DNA from: Styela clava | Lineage: Eukaryota | Length of the DNA stretch: 64,000 bases | Assembly: GCF_964204865.1 (NCBI RefSeq) | Contig: NC_135260.1 | Location: 496,001 to 560,000 of the forward strand | Direction: 5' to 3' | Shown here: piece after piece, positions 3,559-37,710 of the stretch | How the letters are laid out: each line of letters begins with the position of its first letter | Numbering within the stretch: the stretch's first letter is position 1 | Position numbers and translations under genes: made by a program | The notes under the pieces: generated by a model | The model's database searches: none | What the model saw: only the letters and a program-made list of their open reading frames with translations | Told to the model about the DNA's origin: nothing

Positions 3559-4544
3559 GTATTTCGCAAGCCTTCGGATACAGAAAATATAGACGAATCC
3601 ATCATGTCACGATTCACCGATTTTTGAAACGTAGGCATTTTTTAAGATTTTTCATTGTTTTAATCATGTAACCTAAGTTATAAACTTTTTACTACTTTCA
3701 AATATGCCGTGTATCGTGATCAAAAACATTACATTTTCATAAATTAAGGCCACTCCTTCTCCAAACCGCGTGCGTTTGCCGATAAGACGTAATTATGCTA
3801 ATACAATGGTTCTTTTGATCCATTGTTTAAGGTATCGATGATCCAACAAAAATAGATGTAGCCTATCGTTGCCAGTAATATAAATAAAAATAACACTGGC
3901 GCCCCCCTTTTTTCTGTATAGTTACTAAAGGTTCATGATTTTACGACAAACATACACTGAATCGCCTGAATTCTTCGCAGGCCGCACGAAATTCCTTGGC
4001 GGGCCGCATCGGGCGCAGGTTCGTCACCTCTGACTTAGACCAATCCATTCCATATTAACAGTGGTGTGTGATGGGAATGGTCAGTGAACATTATTTTATT
4101 CTCTTCTGGGTCGCTAACTTATAACTTTTGTTGTGTTTGAATGTAATATGCGCTTCTACATGAATTTCTCGATGATATATTTTGTCGAAGTCGCACACAA
4201 CAAGTGGTTCACGGTACTGTTAACACCTTTTAATCTCTCTAAAAAATGGAATTGGACAACCAGCGGCACTGGTGGTATTGGCCAGAATATTTTTCGCCTG
4301 ACCCGATTCATTACACTCTGTTTCTTTTCAAACTCAAGTGTTTTGTTTTTCTATTCTAATATATCAAGTCAGTGCATCTGAAACAAATAACTGTTACTAA
4401 TTCAATTCCTATCATGGACTGGCAATTAGATGAGAGTCCGTGGTCCGCCATATATTTATGCCATCTTATCGGCTTTCTTCTCCTCGGATTGAAAATATAT
4501 GAATTTTATCCTATATTTATATTCTACATTGGGTAGGCCTACTC

Positions 4545-4747
4545 CTGTAGTGTGCGAATCAAGATGGCGGACACGCGAACGTAGTATGTGTATCAAGTAA
4601 GGCCATAATTCTATTCCGATTTCCTTATTTTAGTACTATTACGAGTTCGGGGACTAGCCAAGTGACTTCCGCAGTAACTTTGATGTTCCGTAACCGGGTA
4701 CACACACTAAGTTCCAGTATCCGCCATCTTGTTTCGCATAACAACAG
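4545..4747. mobile_element. MITE family 1 copy
   Basis: AAGATGGCGGACACG...TCCGCCATCTTG inverted ends. Confidence 0.8.
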
Positions 4748-6969
4748 GACTTCCCTACAATGCGCCATGCTCTGGATCACTCCTAGAAAATTTTGTCTTA
4801 TTTTGACAATTTGGATGGAACTGTTTTCTGAGAAATACATTTAACTCATCATATTCAAAATAAATCGATGACGTTTTGCAAGACAATTTTATTCACACAA
4901 ATTAGCAAATAATATTTTTGCACTGAAAGTTCAAATTATTTTTCATGAATTTCATTTGTTAAGTTCAGTTCGTGAAAAATAATTTGAACTTTTACTGACA
5001 AAATAGTTGTTCTATGAAATAATAAAATTCAGAAACTAATTTAGGAAATAAAATACCTGAGCAAAGTTAATGAACAAAAATTGTAGTTAATGAAAAATAT
5101 TGTATATCACACTAATTCCCACACAAGAATGAAAAGCAAAAAAAATGATTTTCTTGTCATGTTTCATACGAAATATTAAACTCGCTCATTCTCAAGACAA
5201 TTTTTTTTCAGTTTCAAGAAATTTCTTACATTTCTTTACATTTTGTTCAGGCCACACCAGAATTTCTTTCTATTTTTCAGCTTTTTTACCTATTTAAATA
5301 ACCAGGAAACAATTTTTTTTTGAAAAATATCCAATCCAATGGCATGGTTCAGAACAATTCAAACAATAGCGAATATCATAAAAAAATCCTCAATCCTTAT
5401 AATTCACGCACAAGAAAAATAAAATATTAACATGGGTGAGTAATGAAATTTGTCTATTTTAAAGCAAAGACAATGCTGTAATTGATTTTCATTTTCATGA
5501 ATTTTGTAACAATTGAAAACTCAGACCCAAAATTTTGGATGAATCAACCTTATATTTGTAAAAGATTTCAAGGCAAAAAATTTTTCCGAATAATGTGGTT
5601 ATTTTATTTGGGAGAAATAAATCCATTAAAATAAACATGGCAATTAAATTAAGGTATGAATGCTTAAAATATCGACAATATGGACTGTTGGAGTTATCAG
5701 AAATAAATGTGAAAACTATGTGCAAAATATTTTAGTCAAGAACAATTAACAACAATTATACAGCTTTTACTTTAAAATAGCAAAAACAAAAATAATTATA
5801 CAAAATAACGAAGTAAATTAATATAAATCCACTCCGGCCAATTATGTTTATATCAAAACTATTCTGTACTTTTGTTTGTGGTTATTTTGAATTTAAGTTT
5901 TCTAAATGAATCGAATTTGTATAAAACGATTCATCGTAAAATACAAGGCTGTGGAATAGAAGATGAGCAAGTTCCCACATGATCAGAAGTCTTAATTAGT
6001 TAGAATTGCAGATTTTCAATGTTTTCAAAATAAGTCAAAACTTCCTTATAAATTCAAAAAGCAATATTTTATTGAGCGTTCGTAACTGTCTATCAAAGAA
6101 AGTTTGCATTTACCAAGACTTCATTATCAAAAGTAGATTTTTCGGAATCGATTATGATTTTTCTCCGATTCCACAGCCTTATCGAAATAAAGTTCAATGA
6201 CAAATATCTGAAGACGATGTCTATTTGTAATTTTTGAAACTTTCTTTTTGATTATTCAGTGGTTACAGATTAGCCGTTATTTAGAAAGTATCAAACATTT
6301 TTGTAATTTACTGAGATTTCTTGAACATGAAATATATATTTGAATAAACCGATTCGCTAACATTTCAAGATTATTTTTAATCACTCAGAAACAAATTGAA
6401 TAAAATATTAAATTCAAACATTTCTTGAACACATCTAAGAAATAAAAAAGAGTTTGTTTGATGGAAATATAAAAATTAATGCAGTTTCATTGAAATTCCT
6501 ACCCAAGAAAAGCACGCCAGAAAGACAATTTGAATAAGTGAGCATAAAATAGCATCGGTTCAATTCAGTGGAATTCATGTGTGAAGTAAATAAGAGAACA
6601 TGGTCACCAATTCCTCGGCTGGTCTTTTTTCAATATAATTTCAAATCTTATTCCAAATGTCATGCGAACATACAATATTCTAAGAGGCCGATTGCGACCC
6701 ATGTATTTCAGGCTGATTGTGATCTATGTATCACAGTTCGTGTACCTTGTTCAGACTGAGGTATTGGAACATCGTGAAAATAATAATTTGGGGTGTAAAT
6801 TAAGCTGCATGTGTGGCTGACGAATATTCGGGAATACAATAGCATACTCTTGTTCAACTGTGGAAATAGTAATTCAAAGTTTTAATTAAGCTACTAGGGT
6901 GAATAACCATTACTCTTATTTAAAGTCAAGTAATTCTACATTTTCTGTTTATCAATTCAATGGACACAA

Positions 6970-7972
6970 TTATAATTCATTTTCACAGATGGCTCCGTGA
7001 AATTTAGTGGAAGGAGAATCATTATAAATCCATTGATATTTCGGATTTCGATCGACCTCAAAAACAACAGTTGCGTGCAATACACCGGAATCCGTAGTAT
7101 CAGGAGACCAAACCGCAGTTGGCAGAGTCATAGCTTGGCCCGTCGTTGTATACAGCTGACCGTTCTGTTGAAATAAAAATATGTTTTGAGGAATATAACA
7201 AATGACAGTTAGAGAATATAACAGTTGGGTAAAGTTGAACCAGTAATCCATACCATATGATCTGACAAAGCAAAACAAACTCTTCTGATCTCCAGTAAGA
7301 AACTAAATGAAGCGTGACACCATTCCGCGATTTTTCTGGTCAGCCACACTTCAGTGATTACCATTGGTGGATAAGAATTGAATGGAACAGACACATAAAT
7401 CAAACTGTTTGGATTAGTCTCCTCTGATTCAGTATCAGAGCCGTAAAGTCGAAGCGTTTCACTGATGCTGGAGTCAAATTGTTGAATTACCCGGAAATAT
7501 TACATAAAATTTTGTGACTCAATTTTTCGATAAAAACTGAAAAACGGCTGGCAAACGAATTTTTTTAATCCTGTTAGGAAAACAAATGCAATAGCAGACT
7601 GGATTAGTCAGTGTTATAAATGTCTCGATTTTAACTTCTCTCCTATGATAAAGCTATATGGGTTTAACCTCAACATAAAATTTATATGGTAATTCGGTAA
7701 CAATATCCGCCACATTTTATAATGATTTCATGTATGGCCGTATGAGCAACATGATTCAGATTCAATCTACCTTGTAAGTCATTCCCGTACGAACAGTAAT
7801 CCATGACTTTCCATCAGGAATCATTGATCGTAAATAATCTCGAAGCATGTTGTAGTGTGTGACGTCATAAATGTTAGCCAGTTTTTTTCCACAAAGAGTT
7901 TCAGCGACGCTTGATGTGACGTTCCTCGTTTTATAAAATATTGCTCGAAAACATTTTGCATCATAGACAATG
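6970..7972 (-). CDS. Gene A C-type lectin-like domain exons (7771-7972, 6970-7164)
   Basis: IVYDAKCFRAIFY...AETLCGKKLANIYDVTHYNMLRDYLR...WITVRTGMTYK|NGQLY...VWSPD...IYNDSPSTKFHGAICENEL*; Cys pattern and A-x-x-x-C...LA-x-I helix of a CTLD. Confidence 0.75.
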
Positions 7973-8479
7973 CTGAAAGAAAAATGACATTTAAAAGAGT
8001 TTATAGTAAGATAATTGTGAAACAATTATTGAGGAGAATTTATAATTTCAAGTTCAAATTAACAACTTTTATTCATTTTATTCAGGATAATTGTCTTTTG
8101 TAGTTTTTTACCATAATATGATTGTGAGCACTTCATAAGTTTTGATCATACCTCATTTTTTTTTATTTCAAGAAAAGACATGCAAACTCACTCACAATTC
8201 AATTAAACGTTTTTCAGAGCAAAGTCGCGCAGCCACTGAGGTTTTGAAGCTAAACAAATGTAACAGATTTAGGGAAAATAAACACCAACGTAAAGGTGTT
8301 TTAAAGGCTTCACGGGGTTTAGACTTGTTTGTTAAATTGTTTGTTCTTTGAGTATTAGCTTATTGCAAGCCTAAGATAATCCCCATTCACATGAATAGGG
8401 ATATTGAGCTGCTATATAGACAGCAGGTTAGAGATGAGGATGGTTGAATGATCTTTATCGCTATGGGAAAGAAACTTAC

Positions 8480-8653
8480 TTGTGCACACTGGTGTCGTGG
8501 ACCATGAACCGTCAGCGTTGCATGTTCCCGTCAGTCCCCCTTCCAAAATGGAACCATTGCTGCAAAAGTAACTGACCTCCTGATCCTCACTATACAAGTC
8601 CTGCTCAGGAGAAATTGTTCCGTTCTCAAGATTTTTCTTCGCACATGGCGTAG
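8480..8653 (-). CDS. Gene A CCP/sushi exon
   Basis: 174-nt phase 1-1 exon TPCAKKNLENGTIS...YFCSNGSILEG...TCNADGSWSTTPVCT; four Cys plus the Trp of a CCP module. Confidence 0.85.
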
Positions 8654-8904
8654 CTGCAAATAAATCAAATAATAAAAAAAAAGTATAACTTGACTTGCAG
8701 GGTATTTGTTTGAAATTATTTTAAATTTCTGAAATTTTTCTTCACTCTAAGTAAGGCTTTGTAAAATCAGCCACTGATACAGCAGCATTGTCTAACCCAA
8801 TTTATCGACATGACTGAAATGGGGTTTAAACCCGAGACTATCCGAGAGATCATTTGAAGCTCCGACAACTTTGCCATTGACTAAATAAGTCCTGATGTAC
8901 TTAC

Positions 8905-10291
8905 CTAGACTATAACATTCGGCGGAATTCAAAGTTTTTATGTTGTCTAACTCAACATTTCCGCATGCCTCGAGCTCAAGTTGGACCTGAATGAAAAAAG
9001 ATTGATGTTTGAGCAGGGCTGCGAGGTAGAGTCTAGAGTGGAAGTTAAGAATGCATTCATTGAAAAGTTAAAATCGAACTACGAAGTAAGCAACTTGGAT
9101 TTCTAGGTTTGAGTAAGGAATCAGAATCAAAAATATTTTTTTTGAGATTTATACATGCGGTGAGGAAAGGTGATAACACGGCTAATAGGTGTTTCCAGTT
9201 TGTAAAGGGATTCTAGAGAAACTACAATAATGCAAAGTAATGATTAGAACCTCTGCCTGCTGATGAAGCTGGACTATTATCCACCAAAATCTTAAAAAAA
9301 CATTTGCATGTTAGATGGGATTCGCATCCAAAGCAATTCCGAGTCAAATTGATTTTCGCTATCAAGTGTGTTGCAAACCATGGTATCTGTTGAGTTCGCT
9401 TTCTTTAAAATGAATTTCTCGGTCTTCCAGTTTCGGTTTCCAGCAGAAAATGGCCAGATTGCTGTCCTAAAAATTACAAAACATATCATTGCTGCATTCA
9501 CATAGACTTCCAAAATAAATCAAAATTAGTTATATTCTGCTTTTTTCAGGAAACTCATTTATATGGAATCTATTATAATAGCTGCTATCCTGAGCGCATC
9601 AACTTTAACTGCCTGAAGTTTCATGCCAGAATTTGGCTCACAGATGATAATCAAAGAAAATTATTTTTTTTGGAATGATCTAAAACAAGGGTGTGCAACC
9701 TTTAATAAAAGGGCCAAATATAAATACCTGGATGAAGCAGCTTGCCGCACCTTGATAAATAGGCTTTGCGTGACAACATGGCATGGGTTGTTTATAGTCA
9801 TAGATATTAATTTGGACAGAGGTATAGGTTTTGCTACGCAAAGAGATTGGAATTACTTGCAAGTATCAGATTAAACAAAAATGAAAAATTTGTTTCCAGT
9901 GCCGCACATTTGTCAAAACTGGCACTATTTCCCAGGTTCGCACAAATTTTTTACTGGGGGGGGGGGGGGGGGGGGGCATTTTGCCCGCTGGCGACAGGTT
10001 GTACAACCCTAAAACACTAAATTTCAAATTCCGTTTATGGTTTTTAAAAATAATAATTCTTTACTTAACAGTGAATGCCTATACAAAGCATGCTCCGGAG
10101 TGAAAGCGACGATTAGTCGGGTAAAAAAATAAATGCAGTGTTAGCTACTTACGCTACAGTACCATTGTAAGCCTTAGCCACCAGTTCTCCATCAGATCTC
10201 CCTTTTATGTCGACACTCATGCATAGTTCCTCATTGCCAGCCAAAGTTTTGGGTAAAGATCTGACTGTACCATTACCAGCAAGTACGTAAC
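8905..10291 (-). CDS. Gene A MAM-like domain exons (10153-10291, 9379-9466, 8905-8986)
   Basis: LCMSVDIK..GELVAK...AIWPFSAG..WKT...VQLELEACGNVELDNI..C resembles the MAM pattern CLxF...GxLxV...LW...W...FEA...IALDDI...C. Confidence 0.6.
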
Positions 10292-11363: not shown

Positions 11364-11489
11364 CCTGGGGAGTGGTCGTTCCTTTGACATCTACAACAGA
11401 GGGCGGCACTGAGTTTGTCTCTGATTTTTCCATCGTCTTTTTCATTTTAAAGAGCTTACTTTCCATTTCGTCCAACTTTTCCGTTAAAG
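11364..11489 (-). CDS. Gene A coiled-coil plus S/T/P linker exon
   Basis: 126-nt phase 1-1 exon ALTEKLDEMESKLFKMKKTMEKSETNSVPPSVVDVKGTTTPQG with heptad pattern. Confidence 0.75.
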
Positions 11490-13133
11490 CTGCGAAACAT
11501 AAACGAAAACAGAATTTAAATTGAATCCTCAGTTTTACAGTCCGTATTCAGTAAATATTCTGTAAGAAGATATGTACCCCACTCTCTCTCTGGTTGAAAA
11601 TAGGAATATGAGATGGGTATTGCTTAATTACACGTTATGATGTGGTTGTTGAAAATAGCGCCATAAAAATATGAAAGGATTTATATTCTTATAATAAAAC
11701 GATTGTTAGAAGACATGTACAAGACCGTTTGACGAATATAAAAAAATTGCAAACGTATTTCAAAGGAAAATATATCGTGGACACAAACCTTCCAAAGCCT
11801 TCTCTTCTTCTTTTGTGCACGGTCCTTCCTGAAATGGAACAAAAGAGAAATGTTTAAATATATGGATATGAAGGCTGCACATCCGTGCAGTAATGTCTTA
11901 GCTGAGCAGAGGTTTCCCGTGAAAAACTGTTCCCACGGAATGAAGTGAAAACAAAAAATCTGGGATTATAGTATGTTTTGAACCTTCAGTACTTATAGAT
12001 GTAAGAAATTGCTAGAAAGTTCAATATATAATTTTTGTTTTCAGATTTCAAGCAAAACAGTTTAATTTCTAATTTCTATAAATAATACCAACAATATGAA
12101 ACTACTACTGAAGCTCTCACCGTAACGTTTTTTCAAGTAGGTTTTCCGTCGCGAACCATAGGAATCCAGCATTTCTCACCTGTCAATTAAAATTAGAAAT
12201 CGAGCAAAATAATCATTTTAAAATAGGGTCATACCAGATAAACGGAAGGTATGTTACTGAACTTTTTTCACATCGAGACAAATTCAGTACCTATTTACTT
12301 ATGGCGCACATTCGCTCATTCCATATTTAATTTCATAATGCTGCGCCCGTCATGCGAACGCACTATTTTTCCTCGATGATGATTGATCGAATCAAATTTG
12401 AACTATTATGCCCGCCATAGGGAAACCTAATGATGTTTAACGTTACTGCAAGCATGGTCTAAGATCTGTTCGATACCCGCGATTCAGTTTCGAGAATCTG
12501 AGTATCGTAACAATTCTTTCAGGCTAACAATGAACTCAGGAATAAACAATAAACTCAAATTCACTCATAGTTTGCTGCTCTGGACCTTCTTCAGGATTCA
12601 CATAGTTCCGAGTATTTCTGTAGTTTATTCAACATCTTTCGATGAGATTTATTTGACGTTTTGCACGTCTTTCCACCCGAACAAGACTCTGTGTTAACGG
12701 CCACTGATACGTTATTAGCTGATATATTTTAGACGGGCACAATCTTGTTGATTCGGCATTACTTATTCAGTTTACAACAATGTATATTACGATACAAAAT
12801 TTTAGGTTTAAAAACTGAAACATTCCGTATGAGGTAATCCTCTCATCGAAGATTTAAAACCAAAGCGCTGTATTGCATACTCGTATATATATTATGATGA
12901 AGGAACGGCCATTTGGCACAATCATCATTTATTTTTATAGTGGCCCCCGCTTTTGGAGTGCAACAAAGGTCTAGTTAGAATTTCTCCGTAACTAATTCAA
13001 CTTTTAAAGAGAGATCGATGTTTGCCATGTTATTACACCGCCATACTGACTTCCTCTATGCTGGAACAAACTTAAAAATTATACATAGATACGTTGGCTA
13101 CGTATAATAAACAACAAATCCGGAATCTGAGTC

Positions 13134-13256: not shown

Positions 13257-13369
13257 AATGAACGCAGGTCAGTCAGTCAGTTCCATGGCAAGTTTACTGA
13301 AAGGTTGCGAATGGGGTCGGTACTTTAGTTCAAGACAATTTCTTCCAAGCAAGATTACGTAGATTCACT

Positions 13370-19119: not shown

Positions 19120-20113
19120 TTATAATTCACTTTCACAGATGGCTCCGTTATATTCAGAGGAAGGACGAACATTATAAATCCCTTGATATATGTTTTCCGG
19201 GTTAAGATTGACAAGAACAACAACAGATGTCCACGATGCATAGGGCTTCGGATAATTAGGATACCAAACCTCTTTTGGCAGAGACATAGCTTGACCTGTC
19301 GTTGAATACAGCTGACTGTTCTGTGAAATAAAAATATGTTTTGAGAAATATAACAAATGGCAGTTTGAGAATATACTGGTTGAACCAGTAATCCTTGTCA
19401 TATGATCTGACAAAGCAAAACAAACTCATTTGATCTCCAGTAAGATACTGAATGAAGCGTGACACCATCACGTGATTATTCTGCTTAGTCACACTTCAGT
19501 GATTACCGTTGGTGAATGAGAATTGAATGACATAGACACATAAATCAAATTCTTCTCTGATTCAGTATCAGAGCTGTAAAGTTGAAGCCCTGGTGTTTGA
19601 GTCAAATTGTTGAATTACCCGGAAATATTACATGGAAACGAAAGTTTGTGGTTGAATTTAAAATAAAAACTGGAAAAGGCTGGCAAACAAACTTTTTAAA
19701 TTTGTATGAAAGTCAAATTTGATATCAGCTTGGATTAGTCAGTGTTATAAATGGCCCGATTTGAACTTCTCTCCTATGCTAAAGCTATATGAATTTAACC
19801 TCAAGATAAAATGAAATAGTAGTACATGGTAATGCAGAAACAATATCGGCTTCATTATATAATGATTTCATGTATGGCCGCACAAGCAACATGATTCAGA
19901 CTCGACCTACCTTGTAAGTCATTCCTGTATAAACATAAATGTATGACCATCCATCAGGAATCATTGGTCGTAAATAATCTAGAAGCAGATTGTAGTGTGT
20001 GACGTCATAAATGTTAGCAAGTTTGTTTTTGCAAAGAGATTCAGCGACGCTTAATGTGACGTTCTGTGCTTTGTAAACGATAGCTCGAATACATTCCAAA
20101 TTATAGCCACATT
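19120..20113 (-). CDS. Gene B C-type lectin-like domain exons (19911-20113, 19120-19320)
   Basis: CGYNLECIRAIVY...AESLCKNKLANIYDVTHYNLLLDYLR...TGMTYK|NSQLY...VWYPNYP...GIYNVRPSSEYNGAICESEL*. Confidence 0.8.
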
Positions 20114-29100: not shown

Positions 29101-32100
29101 GGAGAAATTTGTGAAAACTACATACAGAAATTAGATTTGTTTTTAAACTCAAGTTAATTAAAAGATGATAAGTAATTGTGAACGTCACATGCGGTTTTCT
29201 GAATGAGGCCCTTGCAAAAAAACTTTGCCTCCCGCGCTCCCTCCTTTAGACAAGGTATTATCAATATATGCGGACTCACTATTCTGACTATCCTGCAGGC
29301 TGGATTCCATGGCAGGTGGACGCCCGAGATCGCTAGCGCTTCGCAATAATGCACGAGAGCAAATTCAATTCTGCTCGCCGAAAATTTGCAATTGCTCACC
29401 AATGAAAATCGATTCAAATGGTTTTTAAATCAATAATCCAGTAATATAAAGATGGCAACAAATTGCAGCTCCACAATTGTCAACTACATACTAGCTTGCA
29501 ACAATTTGGCCTGATCAAAAAATGCGAAGCAAAAAAGAATGTCGTGTTGAATGATAGGGATCACATGAGAATAGTTATGGGCGAAAAGATCGCCAGACTC
29601 CCCGCCGACGCTGGTAAGTTACGGCTCTGATTCAGCGCATTTTTTATTCAATAGTTTTACGCAAAACACTCCCAAAATAATGTCAAATTATAAAAATAAT
29701 GTTTGGGGGTCATAGGTCAAACGTCCATTTTTGCTTTGATTCAACGTTTTTTTTTAACCAGCAATTTTACGGGGATTTATTAAACAGTACCAGTATTTAA
29801 AGTCGCACAAACACTCTTATTAAAATTAATAGCAAAGCATAAAAATAATGTTGGGGGTCAAAGATCAAACGTCCATTTTATCCAATAATTTTATGAGGCT
29901 GTATTGAACAGCATTGCATCTAAAGTCAAAGTCAGTTGCACGCGAGTGCAGTCGTTTTGCACGCCATTAGCTATAATTGCACGTTGTGAATTCTGATTTG
30001 CATGCGAGAATTGCTGATTGCACGCCCGATTTCTCGTTCAAAAAGGCCATGAAATCCAGACTGGTGCCATTACCCGTTCATGTTGGGTTTAGAGATAATT
30101 ACTAGTTAATTGTTTCAGATACACAGACTAGATGGTGAGAAAGCCGTAAACGACCAGCGGTTATGTGATAGCGAGGGGTCCATCAATACTCTCGCACATA
30201 ATTATCCCTTAATGAAACCACCGAACACCTCGGAGTTTGAAAAATTATCCACGATTAAACAGCGCTATGTGAACACTTACCTACGCAAGTGGGCACCTCA
30301 CCCCAGGTTCCATTTTCTCTGCATTTTCCAATGTCTGATCCTTGAAGAACGTATCCAGCATTGCATGAATATTCGATAGTCTGATTGACCTCTAAGGCAG
30401 TTGCGGTGTCTACAGTCCCGTTGTCTGGAGCTTCAGGGGCTGGGCAGGTACGTACTGTAATAGAATATTGAAACAGGTATTGGAGAAAGTTGTGAAAAAT
30501 TTTTATGACTACATACAGAAATTAAAATTGTTTTTAAACTTAAATAAAAGATCTAAACAATGTCAGCAACCATTCAATTTGCAAAAAAAACGTCACCCAC
30601 CCCCTCTTCTATAGTTTCCTACTTGAGGTACTAAACTACATGAAACCCTAATTTTTCACAGTGTGGTGACCAAACTTCACAACAGACATGGTTTTGGAGC
30701 GAGGGTAAAAAATATTTCCCACCTGGTCTGGCGGGCCATAAAAGTGTGACGTAAAAAGTTACATTTTATGAATAATATTTACAGTGTTACAAAAGCAAAA
30801 GTGGAAACAATAGGCCTTGTGTCAAAACTAAATTAAATAGCAATATCAACAAATTCCTTGAGCTATTTTTAACTGAAACAGTAAAATTTGGTTTTATTTT
30901 GGGGGACCAGATGAAATTACCCATCAGGCCTGATTTGTCCCGCAAGCCGCAGGTTGCCCATGTCAGATTATTAAGATACTGGATGGGGAAAACTACAACT
31001 CGTCACAGCCTTTCGTGCGGTCAATTAGGTCTTGGAGAAATTTGTGGAAACTACATACAGAAATTAGATTTGTTTTTTAAGCTTAAGATGAAACACTCCC
31101 AAAATTAATGTCAGAGTAAAAAAATAATGTTTGGGGTCAAAGGTCAAACGTCCATTTTTGCCCTTGATTCAAAGTATTTTTTTTAGCCAGCAATTTTACG
31201 CGAATGTACTAAACAGTACAGGTATTTATAGTCGCACAAACACTCTTAAAATTAATAGCAAAGTATAAAAATATTGTTGGGGGTCAAAGATCAAACCTCC
31301 ATTTTTGCTCTGATTCAACAATTTTTTATCCAATAATTCTACGAGGATGTATTGAACAGCATAGCATCTAAAGTCAAAGTCAGTTGCACGCGGGCGCAGT
31401 CGTTTTGCGTGCCGTTAGCTATAATTGCACACCGGGTATTCGGATTTGCATGTGAGAATTTCTGATTGCACGCCCGATTTCTCGTTCAAAAAAGGCCTTG
31501 AAATCCAGACTGGTGCCATTACCCGTTCATGTTGGGTTTAGAGATAGTTACTAGTTAATTGTTTCAGATACACAGACTAGATGGTGAGAAAGCCGTAAAC
31601 GACCAGCGGTTATGTGATAGCGAGGGGTCCAGCAATACTCTCGCACATAATTATCCCTTAATGGAACCACCGAACACCTCGGAGTTTGGAAAATTATGCA
31701 CGATTAAACAGCGCTATGTGAACACTTACCTACGCAAGTGGGCACCTCACCCCAGGTTCCATTTTCTCTGCATATTCCAATGTTTGATCCTTGAAGAACA
31801 TACCCAGCATTGCATGAATATTCGATAGTCTGATTGACCTCGAAGGCAGTTGCGATGTTTACAGTCCCGTTGTCTGGAGCTTTAGGGGCTGGGCAGGTAC
31901 GTACTGTAACAGAATATTGAAACAAGTATTGGAGAGAGTTGTGAAATTTTTTATGACTACATACAAAAATTAAAATTGTTTTCAAACTTAATTAAATAAT
32001 CTAAACAATGTCAGCAACCATTCAATTTGCAACAAAAAAATGTCACCCACCCCCTCTTCTATAGTTTCGTACTTGAGGTACTAAACTACACGAAACCCTA

Positions 32101-35100
32101 ATTTTTTACAGGGGGGAGGGGGTTCGCACCTCAAGTATTCTAGTGGCGTAGCAAAACAATTTTTCCATTGGTGTGGTGACCAGACTTCACAACAGACATG
32201 GTTTTTGAAGCAAGGGCCAAAAATTTTGCCCGACTGGTCTGGCGGGCCATAAAAGTGTGACGTAAAAAGTTACATTTTATGAACAATATTTACAGTGTTA
32301 CAAAAGCAAAAGTGGAAAACAATAAGCCTCGTGTCAAAACTAAATTAAACAGAAATCTCAACAATATCCTCGAGCTATTTTCAACTAAATCATCAAAATT
32401 AGGTTTTATTTTGATTGTGGCATAACTAGGTGGGCCAGATTAAATTACCCAACAGGCAGACAGGCCGGATTTGGCCCGCAGGCCGTAGGTCGCCCATGTC
32501 AGATTAAAATCCTGGATGGGAAAACTACAACCCCATAGCGTTTTGCTGTTTTGTGGCGTCAGTCAAGTCTTGGAGAAAGTCTGAAAGTTGTGAAAACTAC
32601 ATACAGAAATTAGATTTGTTTTTAAACTCAAAAATGTCCCGTCATTTTGTTCAATAAAACAAACACTCCCATGTGTCTCACAAACGAGGGGCATCTGGCA
32701 CCACGTCAGATGCGTCCTATCAAGCCATGCTTGTCTCAATAATAATCTAAACTAATCTCGGTTGTCACATGACCAAAATTGCCTGTTTTTTGTTAAAAGC
32801 TCTCGAATGCCACGGTAAAATTTTTTTTCCTTGGGCAAATCGGATCACTTTTTCCCCCCGAGGAATTCAATGATGACGTTTTTAGATTGCACTTTTTTTA
32901 GTATTTTGCGCAAATTCAACAATGTCCAGACGTCTCCCAAAGGAGGGGTGTCTGATCATCAGTAAAATGGGTTTTTCTGAAACGAGACAATGTCGCTCAA
33001 TCTGTATAATGTGCTGCACGGTACTGAAAGGTAAAATATAGTACGGTAAGTATAGAAGTTATTGTGATGTCACATGCGGGTTTTACGAATGCAGGAATGA
33101 GCCTTTGCAAAAAAAACTTTGCCTCCCCCACTCCCCCCTTCTAGACAAGGTGTTATCAATATATATGGAGCTACCATTCCAGCATTATGACTATTCCTGA
33201 ATCTCAAGTTATCTTTCCTCTTTCTGCTGTTCTGTCTTTGGGGCCTTAGGTGCTTATCAATACTGTACCTTGAATAGATTGACTAAATTTGGGCATATGT
33301 TATTTCTGCCCTTTTTTGACCCATCTGACTGCGGCATCCAAAAATTATGTCACTACGACTCCACGGTGACGTAACAAGCACCCAGAATATACAGACGGGC
33401 ACCCAAAACGCACAGAAAATTAGCCGAAATCGAGCAAGCTGCATTGGCGTCTCATGTAGTTTCTTACCTATTTAACCTATTTCTTACCTAACATACTTCT
33501 AGTGGGCGTAGCATGAAAATTTTTTCACGTATCAATCCTAACCCCCATCTGACTACACCATCCAAAAATTACGTCATTACGACGTCACAGTGACGTAATA
33601 GAGCCCTTCAAACTATATGAACTGCCATCCAAGACGCGCAAATGAGCACCCGAAATCGAACAGTTAGTTCTCTCGTTTTCTCGTCGCAACGATTCCAATA
33701 GGAGAGAGACCGATAACGTCAGTCAGTTTTTTATCGTCGGCGCCAATCTCGTTTCGGCCGATCGTGCGTATATTTGGCAAGCTCTATGCCGTGATTGTGA
33801 TGTCGTAGTGATTTAATTTTTGGATGGCGTAATCAGATGGGGGTTAGGATTGACATATCAAAAAATTGTTATGCTACGCCCACTAGAAGTACGTTAGGTA
33901 CAAAACTACACAAGACAAATGCATTGTATACAAGTCATTCTCATAGTTGGATCATTTTGTAGAGCTCAAATGAACAGAAGTTTAAATTAAACATTTTGAG
34001 GTTTGCGAAGTGATCGAACGACAAGAAAACGACAGAAAAAAAGTATGACACCTAATTCGGCATAGCTTGCTCGATTCGGGGTTATCATAAGCACGTTTTG
34101 GACGACCGTCCACATTAAATCACTGTGATTTTTGAATGGCGTAGTCAGATTATCGGTAGTCATATGGGGGTTCGGATAGACATATGCAAAAATGGTTATA
34201 CCACGACCACTAGAAGTACTAAACTAAAGTTCAAGCTGGACTTGCTATGGAAAAGCTTAACTTTTTATTTGTAAGAAAACAACTCACCTACCAAAACTGA
34301 ACAAAAAAAAAACGTGAGTAACAGCGATTTCTGGGTCTAGTACCGGTACAGTTCAGTTTAGTCCCACAAGATGGCGTACATAGTCCGAGCGTTGCCTCGC
34401 TTTATGACCTTCTGACCTTTGTCGTTTTGCTGTGAGACTCGAGAAATCGCGGCCTGGTATAGTTGAGTACCAAAAGTACTTCTAGTGGGCGTAGCATAAC
34501 CATTTTGGCATGTGGTATTCCTCCCCCCGACATGCAAATTTAAACCATTTAATACGTCATCCAGAAAAGACCCGCCAAAATATACGAACGTTTTTGCAAG
34601 AATTTATTTTTTTTGGATGACGTAGTCAGATGATGGTCGGGAATGACGAATGCCAAAATGATATGCTACGCCCGAAGTACTTGTTGTACTAAACTACACT
34701 ACACCCCGATTTCTCGAATCGCAGAGCGAACGACAGCACCAAAGGTCAGAAGGTCATGAAGCGAGGCAACGCTCAGACTATGTACGCCATCTTGTGGGAA
34801 TAAATAAAATCATTTTTCAAGAATAATCTTTTAGGCGAATGTTAATAACTTATAATCAAGTAAATACATTTAGTGTTTTTGGGATTCGTTTTCACATCTC
34901 ACTCCAAGCAAGTCGCTAGAGAAGACAATTACTAGTACATAAGGATCTACTTTTCTTGGAAGTGTCACAATTTACCTTTACTGGACCTCAGGTATTGAGG
35001 AATTCCTACTTAATATATTTGACGCGTACTAAAAAGCGCTTAGAGGAGAAATATTCTCCGAGTGAAAAACGAGAAAGAGGAGGCCACACCAACCTGTACT

Positions 35101-36195
35101 CTGTTCGACTTTTGTAGTTTGTGGGCGAAAAGTAGAGAAAAAGGCTTCCTTAGTTGACCACGGGGATGTAGCAGGGGCGGTAGTTTTCTTGTCTTTGTAT
35201 CCTGTGTGAAAAAGTGAGTTGATATTACAATTTTAAAGCAAGATTCATAGTTTTAGGTGCTTTAAGGAAAGAATGAGATACTGATTGGCAGTGCAAACTT
35301 TTTGTTTTTCAATGTTTTCGCATAATCGCCGTATTACTAATTACTATGACTGAAGAGGACTTTTTGTTCTAGTGCTTGAAAGACTTAGATTTTCTCACCC
35401 TGGGGAGTGGTCGTTTCTTTGACATCTACAACCGAGGGCTGCACTGAGTTCGTACTTAAATCTTCCAACCTCTTTTGTAATTGATCGAGCATACTTTCCG
35501 TCTCGTGTACTTGTTCCGTTAAAGCTGGGAAACATAAATATAAACAAATATTCAATTGAGCCATCAGTTTCACAGTCCATTATCAGTGAATTTTTTGTTG
35601 GAAGATATGTACCCTCACTCTCTGGGTAAAAATAAGAATATGAGACGGGTATTGCTAAACTACACGCCATGATTCAATTCTTCAAAATGGCGCAATAAAA
35701 ATATAAAATATTTGAATTTTTCAATAGAACGATTGTTTGACAAATATGAAAACATGGCAAACGTATTTCGAAGAAAACTATATTGTGAACACGAACCTTC
35801 CAGAGCCTTCTCTTGTTCTTTTGTGCACTGTCTCTCCTGAAATAGAACAAGAGAGAAATATTTAAATATATGGATATGAAGGCTGCACATCCGTGCAGTA
35901 AGGGCTCAGCAGAGCAAGTGTTATCATATGCCGTGAAAAAGTGTCTCCATGAATTAAATGAAAAACGTAAAATCTGGGATGAGGTATCGATTAAGATGAG
36001 TTTCGGTACTTATAGAATGATGGAAGAAATTTCTAGAAAATTCAATTTTTTCATTTTATTTTCAGATTGCAAACAAAACAGTTCAATTCCTGCAATAATA
36101 CCACCAGTATGAATCTACTACTACAGCTCTCACCGTAATAACGTCTCTCCAAGTAGGTTGATCGTCGCAAATCATAGGCATCCAGCATTGCTCAC
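19120..36195 (-). CDS. Gene B: multi-exon mosaic protein (Cys-rich N-terminus, coiled coil, 3x CCP/sushi, MAM-like, CCP, C-type lectin-like domain); signal-peptide exon not located
   Basis: Exons in transcript order, all GT-AG with matching phases: 36134-36195, 35797-35836, 35399-35524, 34288-34296 (microexon), 31730-31903, 30281-30454, 28284-28457, 25610-25748, 24354-24438, 23218-23299, 22757-22933, (optional 20332-20376), 19911-20113, 19120-19320 (TAA). The frame is open throughout; many NxS/T sites. Confidence 0.85.
20524..22055. mobile_element. Non-autonomous hAT-like element, 1.5 kb, in a gene B intron
   Basis: TAGGGAT.CGAC...GTCGCATCCCTA termini, TSD TTGCACA(G/T), subterminal CTCGGATTCG repeats. 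Confidence 0.8.
22515..22725. repeat. ~88-bp intronic tandem repeat x2-3 (single copy in gene A)
   Basis: ATATAGACAGCAGGTTAGGAATAAGGATGG recurs near 22520, 22607 and 22695. Confidence 0.7.
22757..22933 (-). CDS. Gene B CCP/sushi exon (fourth CCP)
   Basis: 177-nt phase 1-1 exon TPCVKQNLANG...YSCRNGFTLEG...TCNADGSWSTTPVCTP. Confidence 0.88.
23218..25748 (-). CDS. Gene B MAM-like domain exons (25610-25748, 24354-24438, 23218-23299)
   Basis: Phases 1-2, 2-0, 0-1 are consistent; homologous to the gene A exons; ends VQLELEASGNVELDNITTLNSSEC. Confidence 0.65.
23563..23830. mobile_element. hAT-like MITE
   Basis: CAATGTTTCCCAAACT...AGTTTGGGAATCCCTG termini; absent from the gene A intron. Confidence 0.65.
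25143..25549. mobile_element. hAT-like MITE in a gene B intron
   Basis: CAGGGGTTCCCAAG...CTTGGGAACTCCTG with degenerate 8-bp TSD CTCTAGAG/CTCAAAAG; empty site in gene A at ~10093; related copy at ~49972-50347. Confidence 0.75.
25965..26930. repeat. 47-bp tandem satellite (~20 units) in a gene B intron
   Basis: Unit GCACTCACTCAGAAGTAAAGGAGACTCATTTGTAAGCAAAGTTACAG with exact 47-bp spacing. Confidence 0.95.
27383..27557. mobile_element. MITE family 1 copy, truncated at the edge of the sushi triplication
   Basis: GTACCAAGATGGCGGACACC...AACCTAACCTGGTACAC. Confidence 0.7.
28284..28457 (-). CDS. Gene B CCP/sushi exon copy 3
   Basis: 174 nt, CAG/GTAAGT, VRTCPAPKAPDNG...YSCNAGYVIQG...CGENGTWGEVPTCI. 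Confidence 0.88.
30281..30454 (-). CDS. Gene B CCP/sushi exon copy 2
   Basis: 174 nt, CAG/GTAAGT, VRTCPAPEAPDNG...YSCNAGYVLQG...CRENGTWGEVPTCV; not shown in the ORF track. Confidence 0.88.
31730..31903 (-). CDS. Gene B CCP/sushi exon copy 1
   Basis: 174 nt, CAG/GTAAGT, VRTCPAPKAPDNGTVNIATAFEV...CRENGTWGEVPTCV. Confidence 0.88.
34288..34296 (-). CDS. Gene B candidate 9-nt microexon
   Basis: Minus strand TACTCAC-G-T10-GTTCAG|TTTTGGTAG|GTGAGT; frame-preserving; positionally conserved in gene A. Confidence 0.6.
   Translation of the reverse strand, partial: FW
34362..34799. mobile_element. Foldback element with long TIRs; related nested copies at 33320-34220 and 10877-11160
   Basis: TCCCACAAGATGGCGTACATAGTC...GACTATGTACGCCATCTTGTGGGA with an inner TACTTCTAGTGGGCGTAGCAT inverted repeat. 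Confidence 0.8.
35399..36195 (-). CDS. Gene B N-terminal Cys exons and coiled-coil exon (36134-36195, 35797-35836, 35399-35524)
   Basis: EQCWMPMICDDQPTWRDVIT|ERQCTKEQEKALE|ALTEQVHETESMLDQLQKRLEDLSTNSVQPSVVDVKETTTPQ; phases consistent. Confidence 0.75.
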
Positions 36196-36734
36196 CTGTT
36201 AAGAGAAAATTAGAATTAGAGTCGAGCGAAATAATAGTTTAAAAATAAGTTTATGACAGATAAACGAAAGTTATGTTACTGAACTTTTTTCATAACGAGA
36301 CTAGTTCAGTACCTATTTCCTTATGGCGCGCATTCGCTCATTCCATATTTAATTTCATACTGCTACCCACGTCATGCGAACGCACTATTTTCCTCGATGA
36401 TGATTGGTCGAATCAAATTTGTAAAATTACGCCCGCCATTGGGAAACCTAACAATGTTTAGCGGTCTTGAGGGCGTGGGCGAAAATCCGACCGATCACCG
36501 CGATTCAATTTCTGGTTTCTGAGAATCGTTTCAATTTTTCTAGCAAGCAATAAACTCGGGAAAGTTGAATTTCCCCCTAGTTTGCTGCTACCTCTATACG
36601 CCTTTCTACCCGAACAAGACTCTCTGTGAACGAACGGCCACTGATACGTAACTATCTGCTATATTTTGGATCGGCAGCGATGTTGTTGATTCGGCATTGC
36701 TTAATCAGTTAACAACACCCTGGGTGAGGTGGTG

Positions 36735-36817
36735 GGTATGAAGTTGAACCCAACATTCTAACTCGCGATGCCAGAATATCTGAGTCAAACGCTTTACCAA
36801 TGGGCCACCACACCCGC
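36735..36817 (-). mobile_element. tRNA-like SINE head fragment
   Basis: Minus strand TGGCCCATTGGTAAAGCG (A box) ... GGGTTCAAC (B box); no complete cloverleaf. Confidence 0.45.
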
Positions 36818-37710
36818 TAATCTATAAGCGATTTTTCACTTCTAAACATTTGAGCGTACGTGACGATATTTAAAATGTAAGTTTAAAAACAAAAAAATTC
36901 TTTCATAGGAGATTTCGAAGCCAAAAAAAGTTTTACAATGAAGGAGGGATCATTTAGTAAGATCCACGGTCAGGACGGAACTTCGACGATAAGAGGCCCT
37001 AGACTGCGCTGTTTGTGAGGCTCCTCTTATATTATGGCGTCATAAATGAATCGCGTGGCATTTTAGCTGCTGGCAAAATACGTAGCAAATCGTCCAAGTA
37101 GATTGGGTATTTGATTTAGAAACTCTGGCCGTAACAAAATACCACGAAACCGGAGCACCGTTTTTCAAATTTATACAAATTCATTATTTCACAGTTTTTA
37201 ATTTTCAAAACGGTAAATATTCGGGACGAGAATTTATTTGATTAATATCTGCTTTAAAAAATAAATTCTAACCCTGTTTTACTCTGGAACAATCCTTTAC
37301 AATTTAAAAACGACTTGAAACTAATAATAGTTTTAAAATGGAATGCCGAGGCCCCTAAGATTTGAGGCCCATATTCTTTAGCTTACGTTGCCTGGTAAAT
37401 CCGGCCTTTTTACGGTACAGCAACGCATTCAATACGTGGCAAAATAAACGAGGTGTTCGAGGAAAAAAGCTATCAGATAAAATATCATTATTTTAAAAAT
37501 AAATGTCGGTTTAACCGTCATCGAAAGACCGAGGTTTGTCATAGCATTACACCGCCATACCGGCTTCCTCTACGTCGTAATAAATAAATATTCCCCCAGA
37601 TACAAATATGCCAGCCGTGACGCGAGAAACAGATAAGAAATTTGTCAATAGAACTATGTCAATTCACAGTGTCGCCATGCCGCATATATTAGCTAAAGCG
37701 CTGATCAACG

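What the first reader, a model, noticed from the sequence alone, without database searches (positions are those of the whole stretch)
4040..37580. Tandem pair of mosaic lectin genes with an unusual architecture: Cys/coiled coil, CCPn, MAM-like, CCP, CTLD
Seen: two paralogous gene models whose exon phases close consistently. Known: N-terminal Cys plus coiled coil plus C-terminal CTLD is the oligomerisation plan of collectins and tetranectin; CCP modules typify complement regulators and selectins. Inference: a collagen-free, collectin-like recognition protein with complement-type modules as the stalk. I do not recognise this domain order from any named protein. It is diversifying by gene duplication, exon copy number, splice rewiring and ligand-loop change, as innate-immune or allorecognition families do.
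Basis: partly seen in the sequence, partly recalled or inferred. Interest (0 to 1): 0.8.

Follow-up and report, generated by a model that had tools for sequence, protein, structure and literature searches.

The report
Sea-squirt coiled-coil CCP-MAM-CTLD family
The window holds one intact, transcribed gene and one decayed copy of a roughly 35-40-member family found so far only in the sea squirt Styela clava. The family encodes secreted mosaic proteins with a probable oligomerising stalk, complement-type modules, a conserved MAM domain and a C-type-lectin-like head whose binding face is evolving unusually fast.

Summary
The architecture is real, but only for the upstream copy. The window is Styela clava, G000:C14:496001-560000.

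**Gene B (minus strand, 38475-19123)**
- It has 15 exons with canonical splice sites and closing phases, giving 637 codons.
- Domain order: signal peptide, Cys-rich piece, three-heptad coiled coil, S/T/P linker, 3 CCP, divergent MAM, CCP, non-canonical CTLD.
- Transcript contigs from three studies confirm four of its 3' junctions exactly.

**Gene A (12179-6970)** is a pseudogene. It has a TGA stop and a Cys-to-Arg change in exon 2, no signal-peptide, linker, N-terminal CCP or first MAM exon, and a 7-nt frameshifting deletion at the first CTLD exon.

**Family context.** The pair belongs to about 38 loci. All true relatives among 1.8 billion representative proteins are S. clava proteins, with names such as "SVEP1-like" or "P-selectin-like".

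**Domain tests**
- Pfam sees only Sushi.
- MAM and CTLD identity rests on fold matches (CTLD Z 13-15; MAM Z about 12, Foldseek E 3e-7) and a profile hit to a solved MAM (E 4e-4).
- The CTLD lacks EPN/QPD/WND, so sugar binding is unproven.

**Selection.** In the CTLD loop region dN is 0.42 against dS 0.15, while the MAM exon shows ω 0.38.

**Shared cassette.** The same N-terminal cassette is also fused to CTLD alone and to a fibrinogen domain.

An earlier scan note (s1-814912) saw this architecture on other DNA.

The parts
38406..38475 (-). Gene B exon 1: ATG at 38475, signal peptide MQIPIRPSFIGLILLVEAYLLIK, donor phase 1.
   Evidence: Sequence reading. tblastn of RefSeq paralogues. At least 40 copies of this exon in the genome.
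36134..36195 (-). Gene B exon 2: Cys-rich piece EQCWMPMICDDQPTWRDVIT, with 2 Cys, phase 1-0.
35797..35836 (-). Gene B exon 3: ERQCTKEQEKALE, carrying the third Cys and the start of the helix, phase 0-1.
35399..35524 (-). Gene B exon 4: heptad-repeat helix (LTEQVHETESMLDQLQKRLEDL, hydrophobic a/d spacing 4-3-4-3-4-3), then the Thr-rich start of the stalk, phase 1-1.
   Evidence: AF2 helix at residues 46-78 of paralogue P0053. Weak Sec2p coiled-coil hits.
35094..35201 (-). Gene B exon 5: S/T/P-rich linker GYKDKKTTAPATSPWSTKEAFFSTFRPQTTKVEQST, phase 1-1.
   Evidence: 100% tblastn match to RefSeq paralogues. Boundaries read.
31730..31903 (-). Gene B CCP1 exon, 174 nt, phase 1-1.
   Evidence: Pfam Sushi E 1e-12. 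Splice sites read.
30281..30454 (-). Gene B CCP2 exon, 174 nt, phase 1-1.
   Evidence: Pfam Sushi E 3.5e-12..
28284..28457 (-). Gene B CCP3 exon, 174 nt, phase 1-1.
   Evidence: Pfam Sushi E 3.1e-11..
26957..27058 (-). Gene B MAM exon 1 (VDLTCDFESSTNPTCGY...), phase 1-1.
   Evidence: About 37 copies in the genome. MAM identity.
25610..25748 (-). Gene B MAM exon 2 (YVLAGNGTIRSLP...LCMSVDIK...NGTVT), phase 1-2, donor AC|GTAAGT.
   Evidence: 38 copies. A loose end at 24438 carries this exon's 3' end (K-A-N-N rather than B's K-A-H-N, so likely from a paralogue or allele). ω 0.38.
24354..24438 (-). Gene B MAM exon 3 (KAIWPFSASTTWKTEKFILKKVNSTDTE), phase 2-0.
   Evidence: Joint 24354|23299 in 4 runs.
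23218..23299 (-). Gene B MAM exon 4 (VQLELEASGNVELDNITTLNSSECYDL), phase 0-1.
   Evidence: Joints on both sides in 4 runs.
22757..22933 (-). Gene B CCP4 exon, 177 nt, phase 1-1.
   Evidence: Pfam Sushi E 1.7e-9. Joints 23218|22933 (4 runs) and 22757|20113 (2 runs).
19911..20113 (-). Gene B CTLD exon 1 (beta0-beta1, alpha1, alpha2, beta2), phase 1-0. It carries a 6-nt in-frame deletion relative to most paralogues.
   Evidence: Contig with no differences at 19990-20103. At least 150 related exons in the genome.
19123..19320 (-). Gene B CTLD exon 2, the hypervariable loop region plus beta3-beta5, with stop TAA at 19125-19123.
   Evidence: Joint 19911|19320. dN/dS 1.76.
18900..19122 (-). Gene B 3' UTR, reaching at least this far.
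   Evidence: Transcript contigs cover 18900-19146 in all four runs.
12121..12179 (-). Gene A relic of exon 2, with an in-frame TGA at 12135-12133 and Cys to Arg at 12153-12151.
11789..11828 (-). Gene A relic of exon 3 (EGPCTKEEEKALE).
11364..11489 (-). Gene A relic of the coiled-coil exon.
10153..10291 (-). Gene A MAM exon 2. MAM exon 1, the linker exon and the N-terminal CCP exons are deleted between here and 11364.
9379..9466 (-). Gene A MAM exon 3.
8905..8986 (-). Gene A MAM exon 4.
8480..8653 (-). Gene A CCP exon.
   Evidence: Pfam Sushi E 2.6e-6..
7771..7972 (-). Gene A CTLD exon 1. A 7-nt deletion at the acceptor removes the first Cys codon and shifts the frame relative to the phase-1 CCP donor.
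   Evidence: Alignment with 9 paralogues.
6970..7164 (-). Gene A CTLD exon 2 with its stop codon.
25965..26869 (.). 47-bp satellite of 19 copies that inflates the intron between B's MAM exons 1 and 2. Four copies lie at 13654-13854.

Best explanation
Gene B is an intact, transcribed member of a family of about 35-40 genes seen so far only in Styela clava. It encodes a secreted mosaic protein of 637 codons.

Domain order:
- signal peptide
- a three-cysteine segment
- a coiled coil of about three heptads
- an S/T/P-rich, probably O-glycosylated linker
- three CCP modules
- a divergent but true MAM domain
- one CCP
- a C-terminal non-canonical C-type-lectin-like domain

Gene A is a decayed duplicate.

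Inferred mechanism:
- The Cys plus coiled-coil cassette bundles chains into disulfide-linked oligomers, most likely trimer-based.
- The linker and CCPs act as a spacer.
- The strongly conserved MAM domain provides a constant interaction surface, either self-association or a shared partner.
- The CTLD face encoded by the last exon is the variable ligand-binding part.

On this reading the family forms a germline repertoire of soluble multivalent recognition molecules. It works like collectins, ficolins or tetranectin without being one of them.

Shown: gene structure, transcription of the 3' half, the domain folds, family size, and the contrast in selection. Inferred: secretion, oligomeric state, ligand type and immune role.
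For: Structure and phases. Exact junctions in transcript contigs from 3 studies.

Paralogous RefSeq proteins with the same order.

Sushi.

MAM:
- Foldseek top hit is LAST-MAM 8a28, E 3e-7, 25% identity.
- VIA gives neuropilin-1 MAM Z 12.3, RPTPmu Z 11.7 and SR-C MAM Z 11.7.
- A sequence profile hits the 8a28 MAM at E 4.3e-4 with the CDFE, TGY, CMSVD and W.T..F.LK motifs aligned.
- Atlas neighbours are MAM clusters.

CTLD:
- Z 13-15 to more than 40 CTLD structures, including CL-K1 and tetranectin.
- Pfam Lectin_C hits 8 of 20 small paralogues.

Family size: 38 MAM-exon copies and at least 40 signal-peptide exons.

Selection:
- MAM exon ω 0.38.
- CTLD exon 2 ω 1.76. Its middle 37 codons show dN 0.42 against dS 0.15 and intron distance 0.16.
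- Mean pairwise identity is 87% for MAM and 61% for CTLD exon 2.

The same N-terminal cassette sits on CTLD alone (P0010) and on a fibrinogen domain (P0072, PF00147).
Against: - No canonical Ca2+/sugar motif occurs in any family CTLD, so lectin activity may be absent.
- The coiled coil is short and modelled at only pLDDT about 60. No multimer model or biochemistry exists.
- Only the 3' 6 kb of B was laid with reads. The 5' exons and the CCP1-3 and MAM exon 1-2 joins of B itself rest on paralogue models and splice logic.
- Some contigs come from paralogues or alleles.
- No RefSeq protein identical to B's exon set was among those retrieved.
- The dN/dS pairs are not independent, and gene conversion is evident in the family.
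- Tissue and inducibility are unknown.
Confidence: 0.6

Rival explanations
1. The family is a structural or adhesive component of mucus, tunic or extracellular matrix, for example the endostyle mucus net. The MAM domain and coiled coil would build a polymer, and the CTLD would bind matrix partners rather than foreign ligands.
For: MAM domains in meprins, RPTPmu and neuropilin mediate oligomerisation or adhesion (established knowledge; structural hits). The proteins have a mucin-like S/T/P linker. The CTLD is non-canonical. In an S. clava endostyle transcriptome, genes auto-named 'SVEP1' and 'P selectin' are enriched in the anterior endostyle (PMC9953650). These are the names RefSeq gives this family, but the identity of those genes was not checked.
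Against: A structural role does not predict dN of 2.6 times dS and intron divergence confined to the CTLD loop face, nor about 38 rapidly turning-over copies with pseudogenes.
Confidence: 0.2
2. The family mediates self/non-self discrimination between individuals or gametes, such as self-sterility or sperm-egg recognition in this hermaphrodite. The hypervariable CTLD would be the specificity determinant.
For: Positive selection on one face, high copy number and copy-number dynamics. Differences between the two assemblies: P0053 from the older annotation is intact, whereas the window's gene A, its closest match at the CTLD exon 2, is broken.
Against: Nothing links the family to gonads or gametes. 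Diversity here is between paralogues, and allelic polymorphism was not measured. The known ascidian self-sterility loci that I recall use other domain types (recollection, not tested).
Confidence: 0.08
3. The apparent architecture is an artefact of stringing together exons of neighbouring genes or pseudogene fragments.
For: It holds for gene A, which has multiple disabling lesions. Other copies are also broken: L010 has a stop and L011 a frameshift. RefSeq models in these arrays contain internally duplicated N-terminal modules (P0028).
Against: B has 15 open exons with closing phases. Four junctions linking MAM to CCP to CTLD are observed in transcript contigs. Many independent RefSeq paralogues show the same order. 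The near-identical 5' exons of LOC120347599 have their own copy at C14:415271, so that model is not a chimera with B.
Confidence: 0.05

Closest known systems
Collectins (MBL, SP-A, SP-D, CL-K1) and tetranectin
   Same: The overall plan matches: N-terminal cysteines, an alpha-helical coiled coil and a C-terminal CTLD. The CTLD model aligns best to CL-K1 (Z 15.0) and tetranectin (Z 14.6).
   Different: There is no collagen region. Linker, CCPs, MAM and another CCP lie between the coiled coil and the CTLD, so the coil is not a neck directly under the head. The EPN/QPD and WND motifs are absent and only 4 cysteines are present. No sequence-level hit to any solved CTLD was found.
Halocynthia roretzi glucose-binding lectin, the MASP-associated C-type lectin of the ascidian lectin complement pathway
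   Same: It comes from a stolidobranch ascidian. As I recall it, it is a soluble C-type lectin whose collagen region is replaced by an alpha-helical segment. A review cites a C-type lectin that interacts with MASP and activates C3 in H. roretzi (PMC5465252).
   Different: No homology was shown. Word and HMM searches returned only S. clava proteins, and I did not have its sequence. It has no CCP or MAM modules as far as I recall.
Insect scavenger receptor class C (SR-C)
   Same: It combines CCP modules with a MAM domain and a mucin-like region. The Spodoptera SR-C MAM is among the best structural matches (Z 11.7). S. clava proteins P0032 and P0023 carry the same MAM subtype in a WAP-CCPn-MAM-CCP arrangement, and P0032 adds a mucin region, a transmembrane segment and a tail.
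   Different: Gene B is secreted, has a coiled-coil N-terminus and ends in a CTLD. It has no somatomedin B domain and no transmembrane segment.
Selectins, SVEP1 and C4b-binding protein (the automatic RefSeq names of the family)
   Same: They share CCP modules and, for selectins, a CTLD.
   Different: Selectins run CTLD-EGF-CCPn-TM, which is the reverse order, and have EGF and a membrane anchor. SVEP1 has VWA, EGF and pentraxin domains that are absent here. Similarity outside S. clava is confined to the CCP repeats, at 24-31% identity.
Ficolins
   Same: A family relative (P0072) puts the same N-terminal Cys and coiled-coil cassette in front of a fibrinogen-related domain (PF00147). That is an oligomerising stalk plus an FBG head.
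   Different: There is no collagen stalk, and it is not the gene in the window.

Membership tests
Sushi/CCP (PF00084) | Pfam HMM above the gathering score; four Cys and a Trp in about 60 residues; phase 1-1 exon | tested here: met
   38-49 bits against a cut-off of 20.7 for four B exons, and 28.2 bits for the A exon. Exons of 174-177 nt in phase 1-1.
MAM domain (PF00629) | Match to the Pfam MAM HMM | tested here: not met
   No PF00629 hit at E up to 10 on five isolated domains, and none at E up to 0.01 on nine full-length paralogues.
MAM domain (PF00629) | Sequence homology to a solved MAM domain | tested here: met
   A profile of 5 family domains hits residues 236-348 of 8a28_A (Limulus LAST-MAM), E 4.3e-4, with CDFE, TGY, CMSVD and W.T..F.LK aligned.
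MAM domain (PF00629) | MAM jelly-roll fold with four conserved cysteines | tested here: met
   Foldseek rank 1 is 8a28, E 3e-7, with meprins also listed. VIA gives neuropilin-1 MAM Z 12.3, rmsd 3.2 over 138 residues, but CBM jelly rolls tie within 1 Z. The Atlas structure search gives neuropilin-2, TM 0.80. Four invariant Cys are present. The model pLDDT is about 75-82.
C-type lectin-like domain (PF00059) | Match to the Pfam Lectin_C HMM | tested here: inconclusive
   No hit on window exons or on an open frame spanning both exons, and none on full-length paralogues. However, 8 of 20 small paralogues of the same CTLD subtype hit, the best at 28.1 bits against a cut-off of 22.6. Exons were not joined, as the operators ruled.
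C-type lectin-like domain (PF00059) | CTLD fold | tested here: met
   Residues about 300-434 of the P0053 model (pLDDT about 90) align to more than 40 CTLD structures at Z 12-15, rmsd 2.1-3.0.
Ca2+-dependent carbohydrate-recognition CTLD (true C-type lectin) | EPN or QPD motif plus WND, and the beta3-beta4 disulfide | tested here: not met
   None of 73 family CTLDs has EPN, QPD, EPD, QPN, WND or WSD. The modal Cys count is 4.
Collectin | Gly-X-Y collagen-like region between the N-terminal Cys and the neck | tested here: not met
   No Gly-X-Y repeats appear in B's exons or in any paralogue sequence. No collagen Pfam hit.
Collectin / tetranectin | Trimeric alpha-helical coiled coil directly preceding the CTLD | tested here: not met
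   A heptad helix exists, but it is separated from the CTLD by the linker, CCPs and MAM. The oligomeric state cannot be tested with these tools.
Selectin | N-terminal CTLD, then EGF, CCP repeats, a transmembrane segment and a tail | tested here: not met
   The CTLD is C-terminal. There is no EGF hit and no hydrophobic segment after the signal peptide in B's exons.

The most novel reading that the evidence does not exclude
S. clava may have built a collagen-free counterpart of the collectin/ficolin system. In this reading one exon-shuffled oligomerisation cassette (signal peptide, three Cys, short coiled coil, mucin-like linker; at least 40 copies) is placed in front of interchangeable heads: CTLD alone, a fibrinogen domain, or CCPn-MAM-CCP-CTLD. 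The CTLD binding face is driven to differ between copies. That would give a germline repertoire of multivalent recognition molecules, which might feed the lectin complement pathway through the conserved MAM/CCP part or the cassette.
Probability: 0.25. Interest if true: 0.75.

Novelty: new variant of a known kind. Interest (0 to 1): 0.55.

Why it matters
Tunicates are the closest living relatives of vertebrates and rely on innate recognition. This family shows how a recognition repertoire can be assembled by exon shuffling from standard modules. An oligomerising cassette, a conserved MAM core and a fast-evolving CTLD face are combined in an order not found in named proteins.

The family is invisible to routine annotation. 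Pfam sees only Sushi, and RefSeq calls the genes SVEP1-, selectin- or C4BP-like. Transcriptome studies in S. clava may therefore be misreading these genes as orthologues of vertebrate proteins.

If the oligomeric-receptor reading holds, the family offers a testable, collagen-free analogue of collectins and ficolins.

It is one of several expanded lectin-type families in this genome. That tempers the surprise but adds to a coherent picture.

Tried and rejected
**Pfam and sequence searches that found nothing**
- Pfam on single exons sees only Sushi. It also finds nothing on an open frame (L013:677-1330) that reads through the CTLD intron.
- A profile of 20 small CTLD paralogues against PDB sequences gives no hit at E up to 10.

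**Exon candidate rejected**
- I considered a further MAM exon at 24738-24890 (A: 9683-9865). It was rejected because RefSeq paralogues and the reads join MAM exon 2 directly to 24438.

**Chimera idea rejected**
- I tested whether RefSeq LOC120347599 (P0028, P0039, P0103-P0105) is a chimera starting at B's promoter. It is not: a 99% identical copy of exon 1 lies at C14:415271, and that gene maps to 371-409 kb.

**RefSeq model of B or A not found**
- None of the retrieved proteins matches the window's exon set exactly.
- P0053, from the older annotation, is the closest to A and is intact.

**Cross-species relatives not found**
- Searches with the MAM exon, a full-length paralogue and a cassette-plus-CTLD paralogue gave only S. 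clava for the specific domains. Other species matched through CCP repeats only.

**High read depth explained**
- Rfam on the region of very high read depth found nothing. The region is a dispersed repeat of about 200 bp.

Stored natural paralogues were used instead.

Full report
**Origin and layout**

- The window is AT-rich animal DNA with no N runs.
- A word search with a paralogous open frame returned only RefSeq proteins of the ascidian Styela clava. Their contig lengths equal those of G000, so the genome is S. clava. The window is G000:C14:496001-560000.
- Local blastn shows two collinear units on the minus strand: A at about 4620-12780 and B at about 15010-36720. They are about 79% identical over exons and introns alike, which indicates a tandem segmental duplication.
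- Hits on C14 at 261-345 kb mirror those at 443-525 kb with an offset of about 180 kb. The pair therefore sits inside a larger duplicated block.

**Gene B**

I worked exon by exon. As the operators ruled, I never joined the exons into a spliced protein for a search or a fold. Natural stored RefSeq paralogues served for whole-protein work.

Splice sites were read on the minus strand, guided by tblastn of the paralogues. This gives 15 coding exons:

| Exon | Coordinates | Content |
|---|---|---|
| E1 | 38475-38406 | signal peptide |
| E2 | 36195-36134 | EQCWMPMICDDQPTWRDVIT |
| E3 | 35836-35797 | ERQCTKEQEKALE |
| E4 | 35524-35399 | heptad helix |
| E5 | 35201-35094 | S/T/P linker |
| CCP1 | 31903-31730 | Sushi module |
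| CCP2 | 30454-30281 | Sushi module |
| CCP3 | 28457-28284 | Sushi module |
| MAM 1 | 27058-26957 | MAM exon |
| MAM 2 | 25748-25610 | MAM exon |
| MAM 3 | 24438-24354 | MAM exon |
| MAM 4 | 23299-23218 | MAM exon |
| CCP4 | 22933-22757 | Sushi module |
| CTLD 1 | 20113-19911 | first half of the CTLD |
| CTLD 2 | 19320-19123 | second half of the CTLD, with stop |

- All boundaries are AG/GT and the phases close. The total is 1914 nt, or 637 codons plus the stop.
- An exon-like open frame at 24738-24890 is not an exon.

**Transcription of B**

- One run search on 18900-24899 found nine runs from three studies holding 7-19% of the sampled words, which is the exonic share.
- I laid four of them. 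Depth falls on the predicted exons and the 3' UTR, and is near zero in the introns.
- The joints are exactly those predicted, with CT..AC ends on the plus strand, which is GT..AG on the minus strand:
  - 24354|23299, in 4 runs
  - 23218|22933, in 4 runs
  - 22757|20113, in 2 runs
  - 19911|19320, in 1 run
- A loose end at 24438 carries the 3' end of MAM exon 2.
- Contigs with no differences cover 19990-20103 and 22801-22935, so B itself or an allele is expressed. Other contigs with a few differences, and two odd joints at 20064/20065, come from paralogues.
They rest on splice logic and paralogue models.

**Gene A**

A is a pseudogene in this assembly.
- Exon 2 reads GEKCWIPMVRDGKPT*KNVT. There is a TGA at 12135-12133 at the conserved Trp, and an Arg codon at a conserved Cys.
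- No copy of the signal-peptide exon lies between A and B.
- The linker exon, the N-terminal CCP exons and MAM exon 1 are deleted.
- An alignment with nine paralogues shows a 7-nt deletion at the acceptor of CTLD exon 1. It removes the first Cys codon and puts the CTLD out of frame with the phase-1 CCP donor.
- An intact close relative (P0053, LOC120346973) exists in the older annotation but has no exact copy in G000.

**Domains**

Pfam confirms Sushi on five exons. It sees nothing else, even in full-length paralogues.

I folded the A-like RefSeq protein P0053 with a 31-row family alignment. The mean pLDDT is 72.5: about 90 for the CTLD, about 85 for the CCP and about 75-82 for the middle domain.

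*CTLD*
- VIA against 48,161 chains aligns residues about 300-434 to more than 40 CTLDs at Z 12-15. The best are CL-K1 (15.0), tetranectin (14.6) and codakine (14.3).
- Pfam Lectin_C hits 8 of 20 small paralogues of the same CTLD subtype.
- A profile of those paralogues finds no solved CTLD by sequence.
- None of 73 family CTLDs has EPN, QPD or WND, and most have only four cysteines.
- This is therefore a CTLD, not a demonstrated C-type lectin.

*Middle domain (residues 104-245)*
- VIA's best matches are MAM domains: neuropilin-1 (Z 12.3), RPTPmu (11.7), Spodoptera SR-C (11.7) and enteropeptidase (11.6). Bacterial CBM jelly rolls tie within one Z unit.
- Foldseek's top hit is the MAM of Limulus LAST-MAM, E 3e-7 with 25% identity. 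Meprins also appear.
- A profile of five family domains finds that same MAM by sequence, E 4.3e-4.
- The Atlas neighbours are MAM clusters.
- The Pfam MAM model is silent.
- I file it as a divergent MAM.

*Helix*
- The helix of E3/E4 has hydrophobic residues in a 4-3-4-3-4-3 spacing over about three heptads, read directly from the sequence.
- AF2 models it as one helix at modest confidence.
- Three cysteines precede it.

**Family**
- The MAM exons occur about 38 times in G000. They cluster on C14 and C16, with further copies on C1, C3, C4, C8, C9, C13 and C18.
- The CTLD exon occurs at least 150 times, from 409 candidates. The signal-peptide exon occurs at least 40 times.
- HMMER with MAM exon 2 against 1.84 billion representatives found 11 proteins. 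Nine named ones are S. clava, one is a chance Leishmania hit, and one, P0030 (1954 aa), was not examined.
- Word searches with full-length paralogues found other species only through CCP repeats.
- RefSeq names include 'SVEP1-like', 'P-/E-selectin-like', 'C4b-binding protein alpha chain-like' and 'ZP3 receptor-like'.
- CCP copy number runs from 0 to 7 before the MAM and from 0 to 4 after it. Some isoforms skip the CCP after the MAM.
- The N-terminal cassette also precedes a CTLD alone (P0010) and a fibrinogen domain (P0072, PF00147).
- The same MAM subtype sits in WAP-CCP-MAM-CCP proteins, one of which (P0032) also has a mucin region and a transmembrane segment.
- Further copies are broken: L010 has a stop and L011 a frameshift.

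**Selection**

Mean pairwise identity among about 22 paralogues:

| Region | Identity |
|---|---|
| MAM | 87% |
| CCP | 79% |
| CTLD exon 1 | 71% |
| CTLD exon 2 | 61% |

Nei-Gojobori estimates, made exon by exon:

| Region | Copies | dN | dS | ω |
|---|---|---|---|---|
| MAM exon 2 | 22 | 0.056 | 0.148 | 0.38 |
| CTLD exon 1 | 8 intact | 0.136 | 0.269 | 0.51 |
| CTLD exon 2 | 8 intact | 0.266 | 0.152 | 1.76 |
| CTLD exon 2, middle 37 codons | 8 intact | 0.42 | 0.15 | 2.78 |

- For CTLD exon 2, dN exceeds dS in 28 of 28 pairs.
- The intron between the CTLD exons has a distance of 0.16.
- The middle 37 codons encode the long-loop region and beta3-beta4, which is the usual ligand face of CTLDs (established knowledge).
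- Caveats: the pairs are not independent, there are few sites, and gene conversion is present.

**Interpretation**

The best reading is a secreted, disulfide-linked, coiled-coil-bundled multivalent recognition protein with a constant MAM/CCP body and a variable CTLD face. It works like collectins, ficolins or tetranectin, but it fails their membership tests: it has no collagen, the coil is not adjacent to the head, and it has no sugar motif.

The rivals are a structural mucus or matrix role, a gamete or individual recognition role, and annotation artefact. The last holds only for A.

A paper on the S. clava endostyle lists 'SVEP1' and 'P selectin' as enriched anteriorly (PMC9953650). This is a lead only, because the identity of those genes was not checked. 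A review records a MASP-interacting C-type lectin in Halocynthia (PMC5465252). I could not test homology to it.

**Earlier scan notes**
- Two first-reader notes on this window agree with what I found: CCP copy number of 3 against 0, and hypervariable lectin loops.
- Note s1-814912 describes the same architecture on another piece of this genome, and s1-814918 the same contrast in conservation. The scan has therefore seen this family before on other DNA.
- Several other expanded lectin families in S. clava were reported by other agents.

**Limits**
- Other tunicate genomes could not be searched.
- The joined spliced protein of B was not built, by rule.

Noticed in passing
window 24080-24300: A dispersed repeat of about 200 bp, with at least 2,540 candidate copies at about 82-85% identity across all chromosomes, sits in the intron upstream of B's MAM exon 3. 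It accounts for a depth of 19,000-36,000 in the transcript contigs. There is no Rfam match.
   Followed up: partly
window 25965-26869 and 13654-13854: A 47-bp satellite has 19 copies in B's intron between MAM exons 1 and 2, and about 4 copies upstream of the gene A relic. In one paralogue (C14:5008773-5009085) that intron is only about 60 nt.
   Followed up: partly
window 53461-54303 (minus strand): A 281-residue open frame looks like a mariner/Tc1-type transposase (DDE-like motifs by eye). An adjacent 89-residue frame at 54251-54517 may be its N-terminal DNA-binding part.
   Followed up: no
G000:C14 261-345 kb versus 443-525 kb: Family exon hits recur at a constant offset of about 178-185 kb. 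This suggests a large segmental duplication that contains the A/B pair and a second pair.
   Followed up: no
P0072 (LOC120348181, C14) and P0010 (LOC120340383): The same signal-peptide, Cys and coiled-coil cassette is fused to a fibrinogen-related domain (PF00147), giving a ficolin-like plan without collagen. It is also fused to a CTLD alone.
   Followed up: partly
P0032 / P0023 (LOC on a 23.8-Mb contig): These membrane or secreted proteins run WAP, CCPn, the same MAM subtype (once or twice), then CCP. P0032 continues with a mucin region, a transmembrane segment and a tail. The layout recalls insect scavenger receptor C and may be the donor of the MAM module.
   Followed up: no
L010 (G000:C16:103737-106991) and L011 (G000:C16:413452-416688): CTLD exon 2 carries an in-frame stop in L010 and a frameshift in L011. 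These are further pseudogenes in the family.
   Followed up: partly
G000:C14:917715-917882 versus window 26913-27080: The open frame around MAM exon 1 is 100% identical (56 of 56 residues, including intron-coded flanks) to a copy 400 kb away on the other strand. The CTLD exons of the two genes are only 73-80% identical. This suggests mosaic gene conversion or a recent partial duplication.
   Followed up: partly
P0028 / P0039 / P0104 (LOC120347599, G000:C14:371-415 kb): These RefSeq isoforms contain two successive copies of the exon 2-5 cassette and 5-6 CCPs, with alternative CTLD ends. This points to an internal tandem duplication of the cassette within one gene model.
   Followed up: partly
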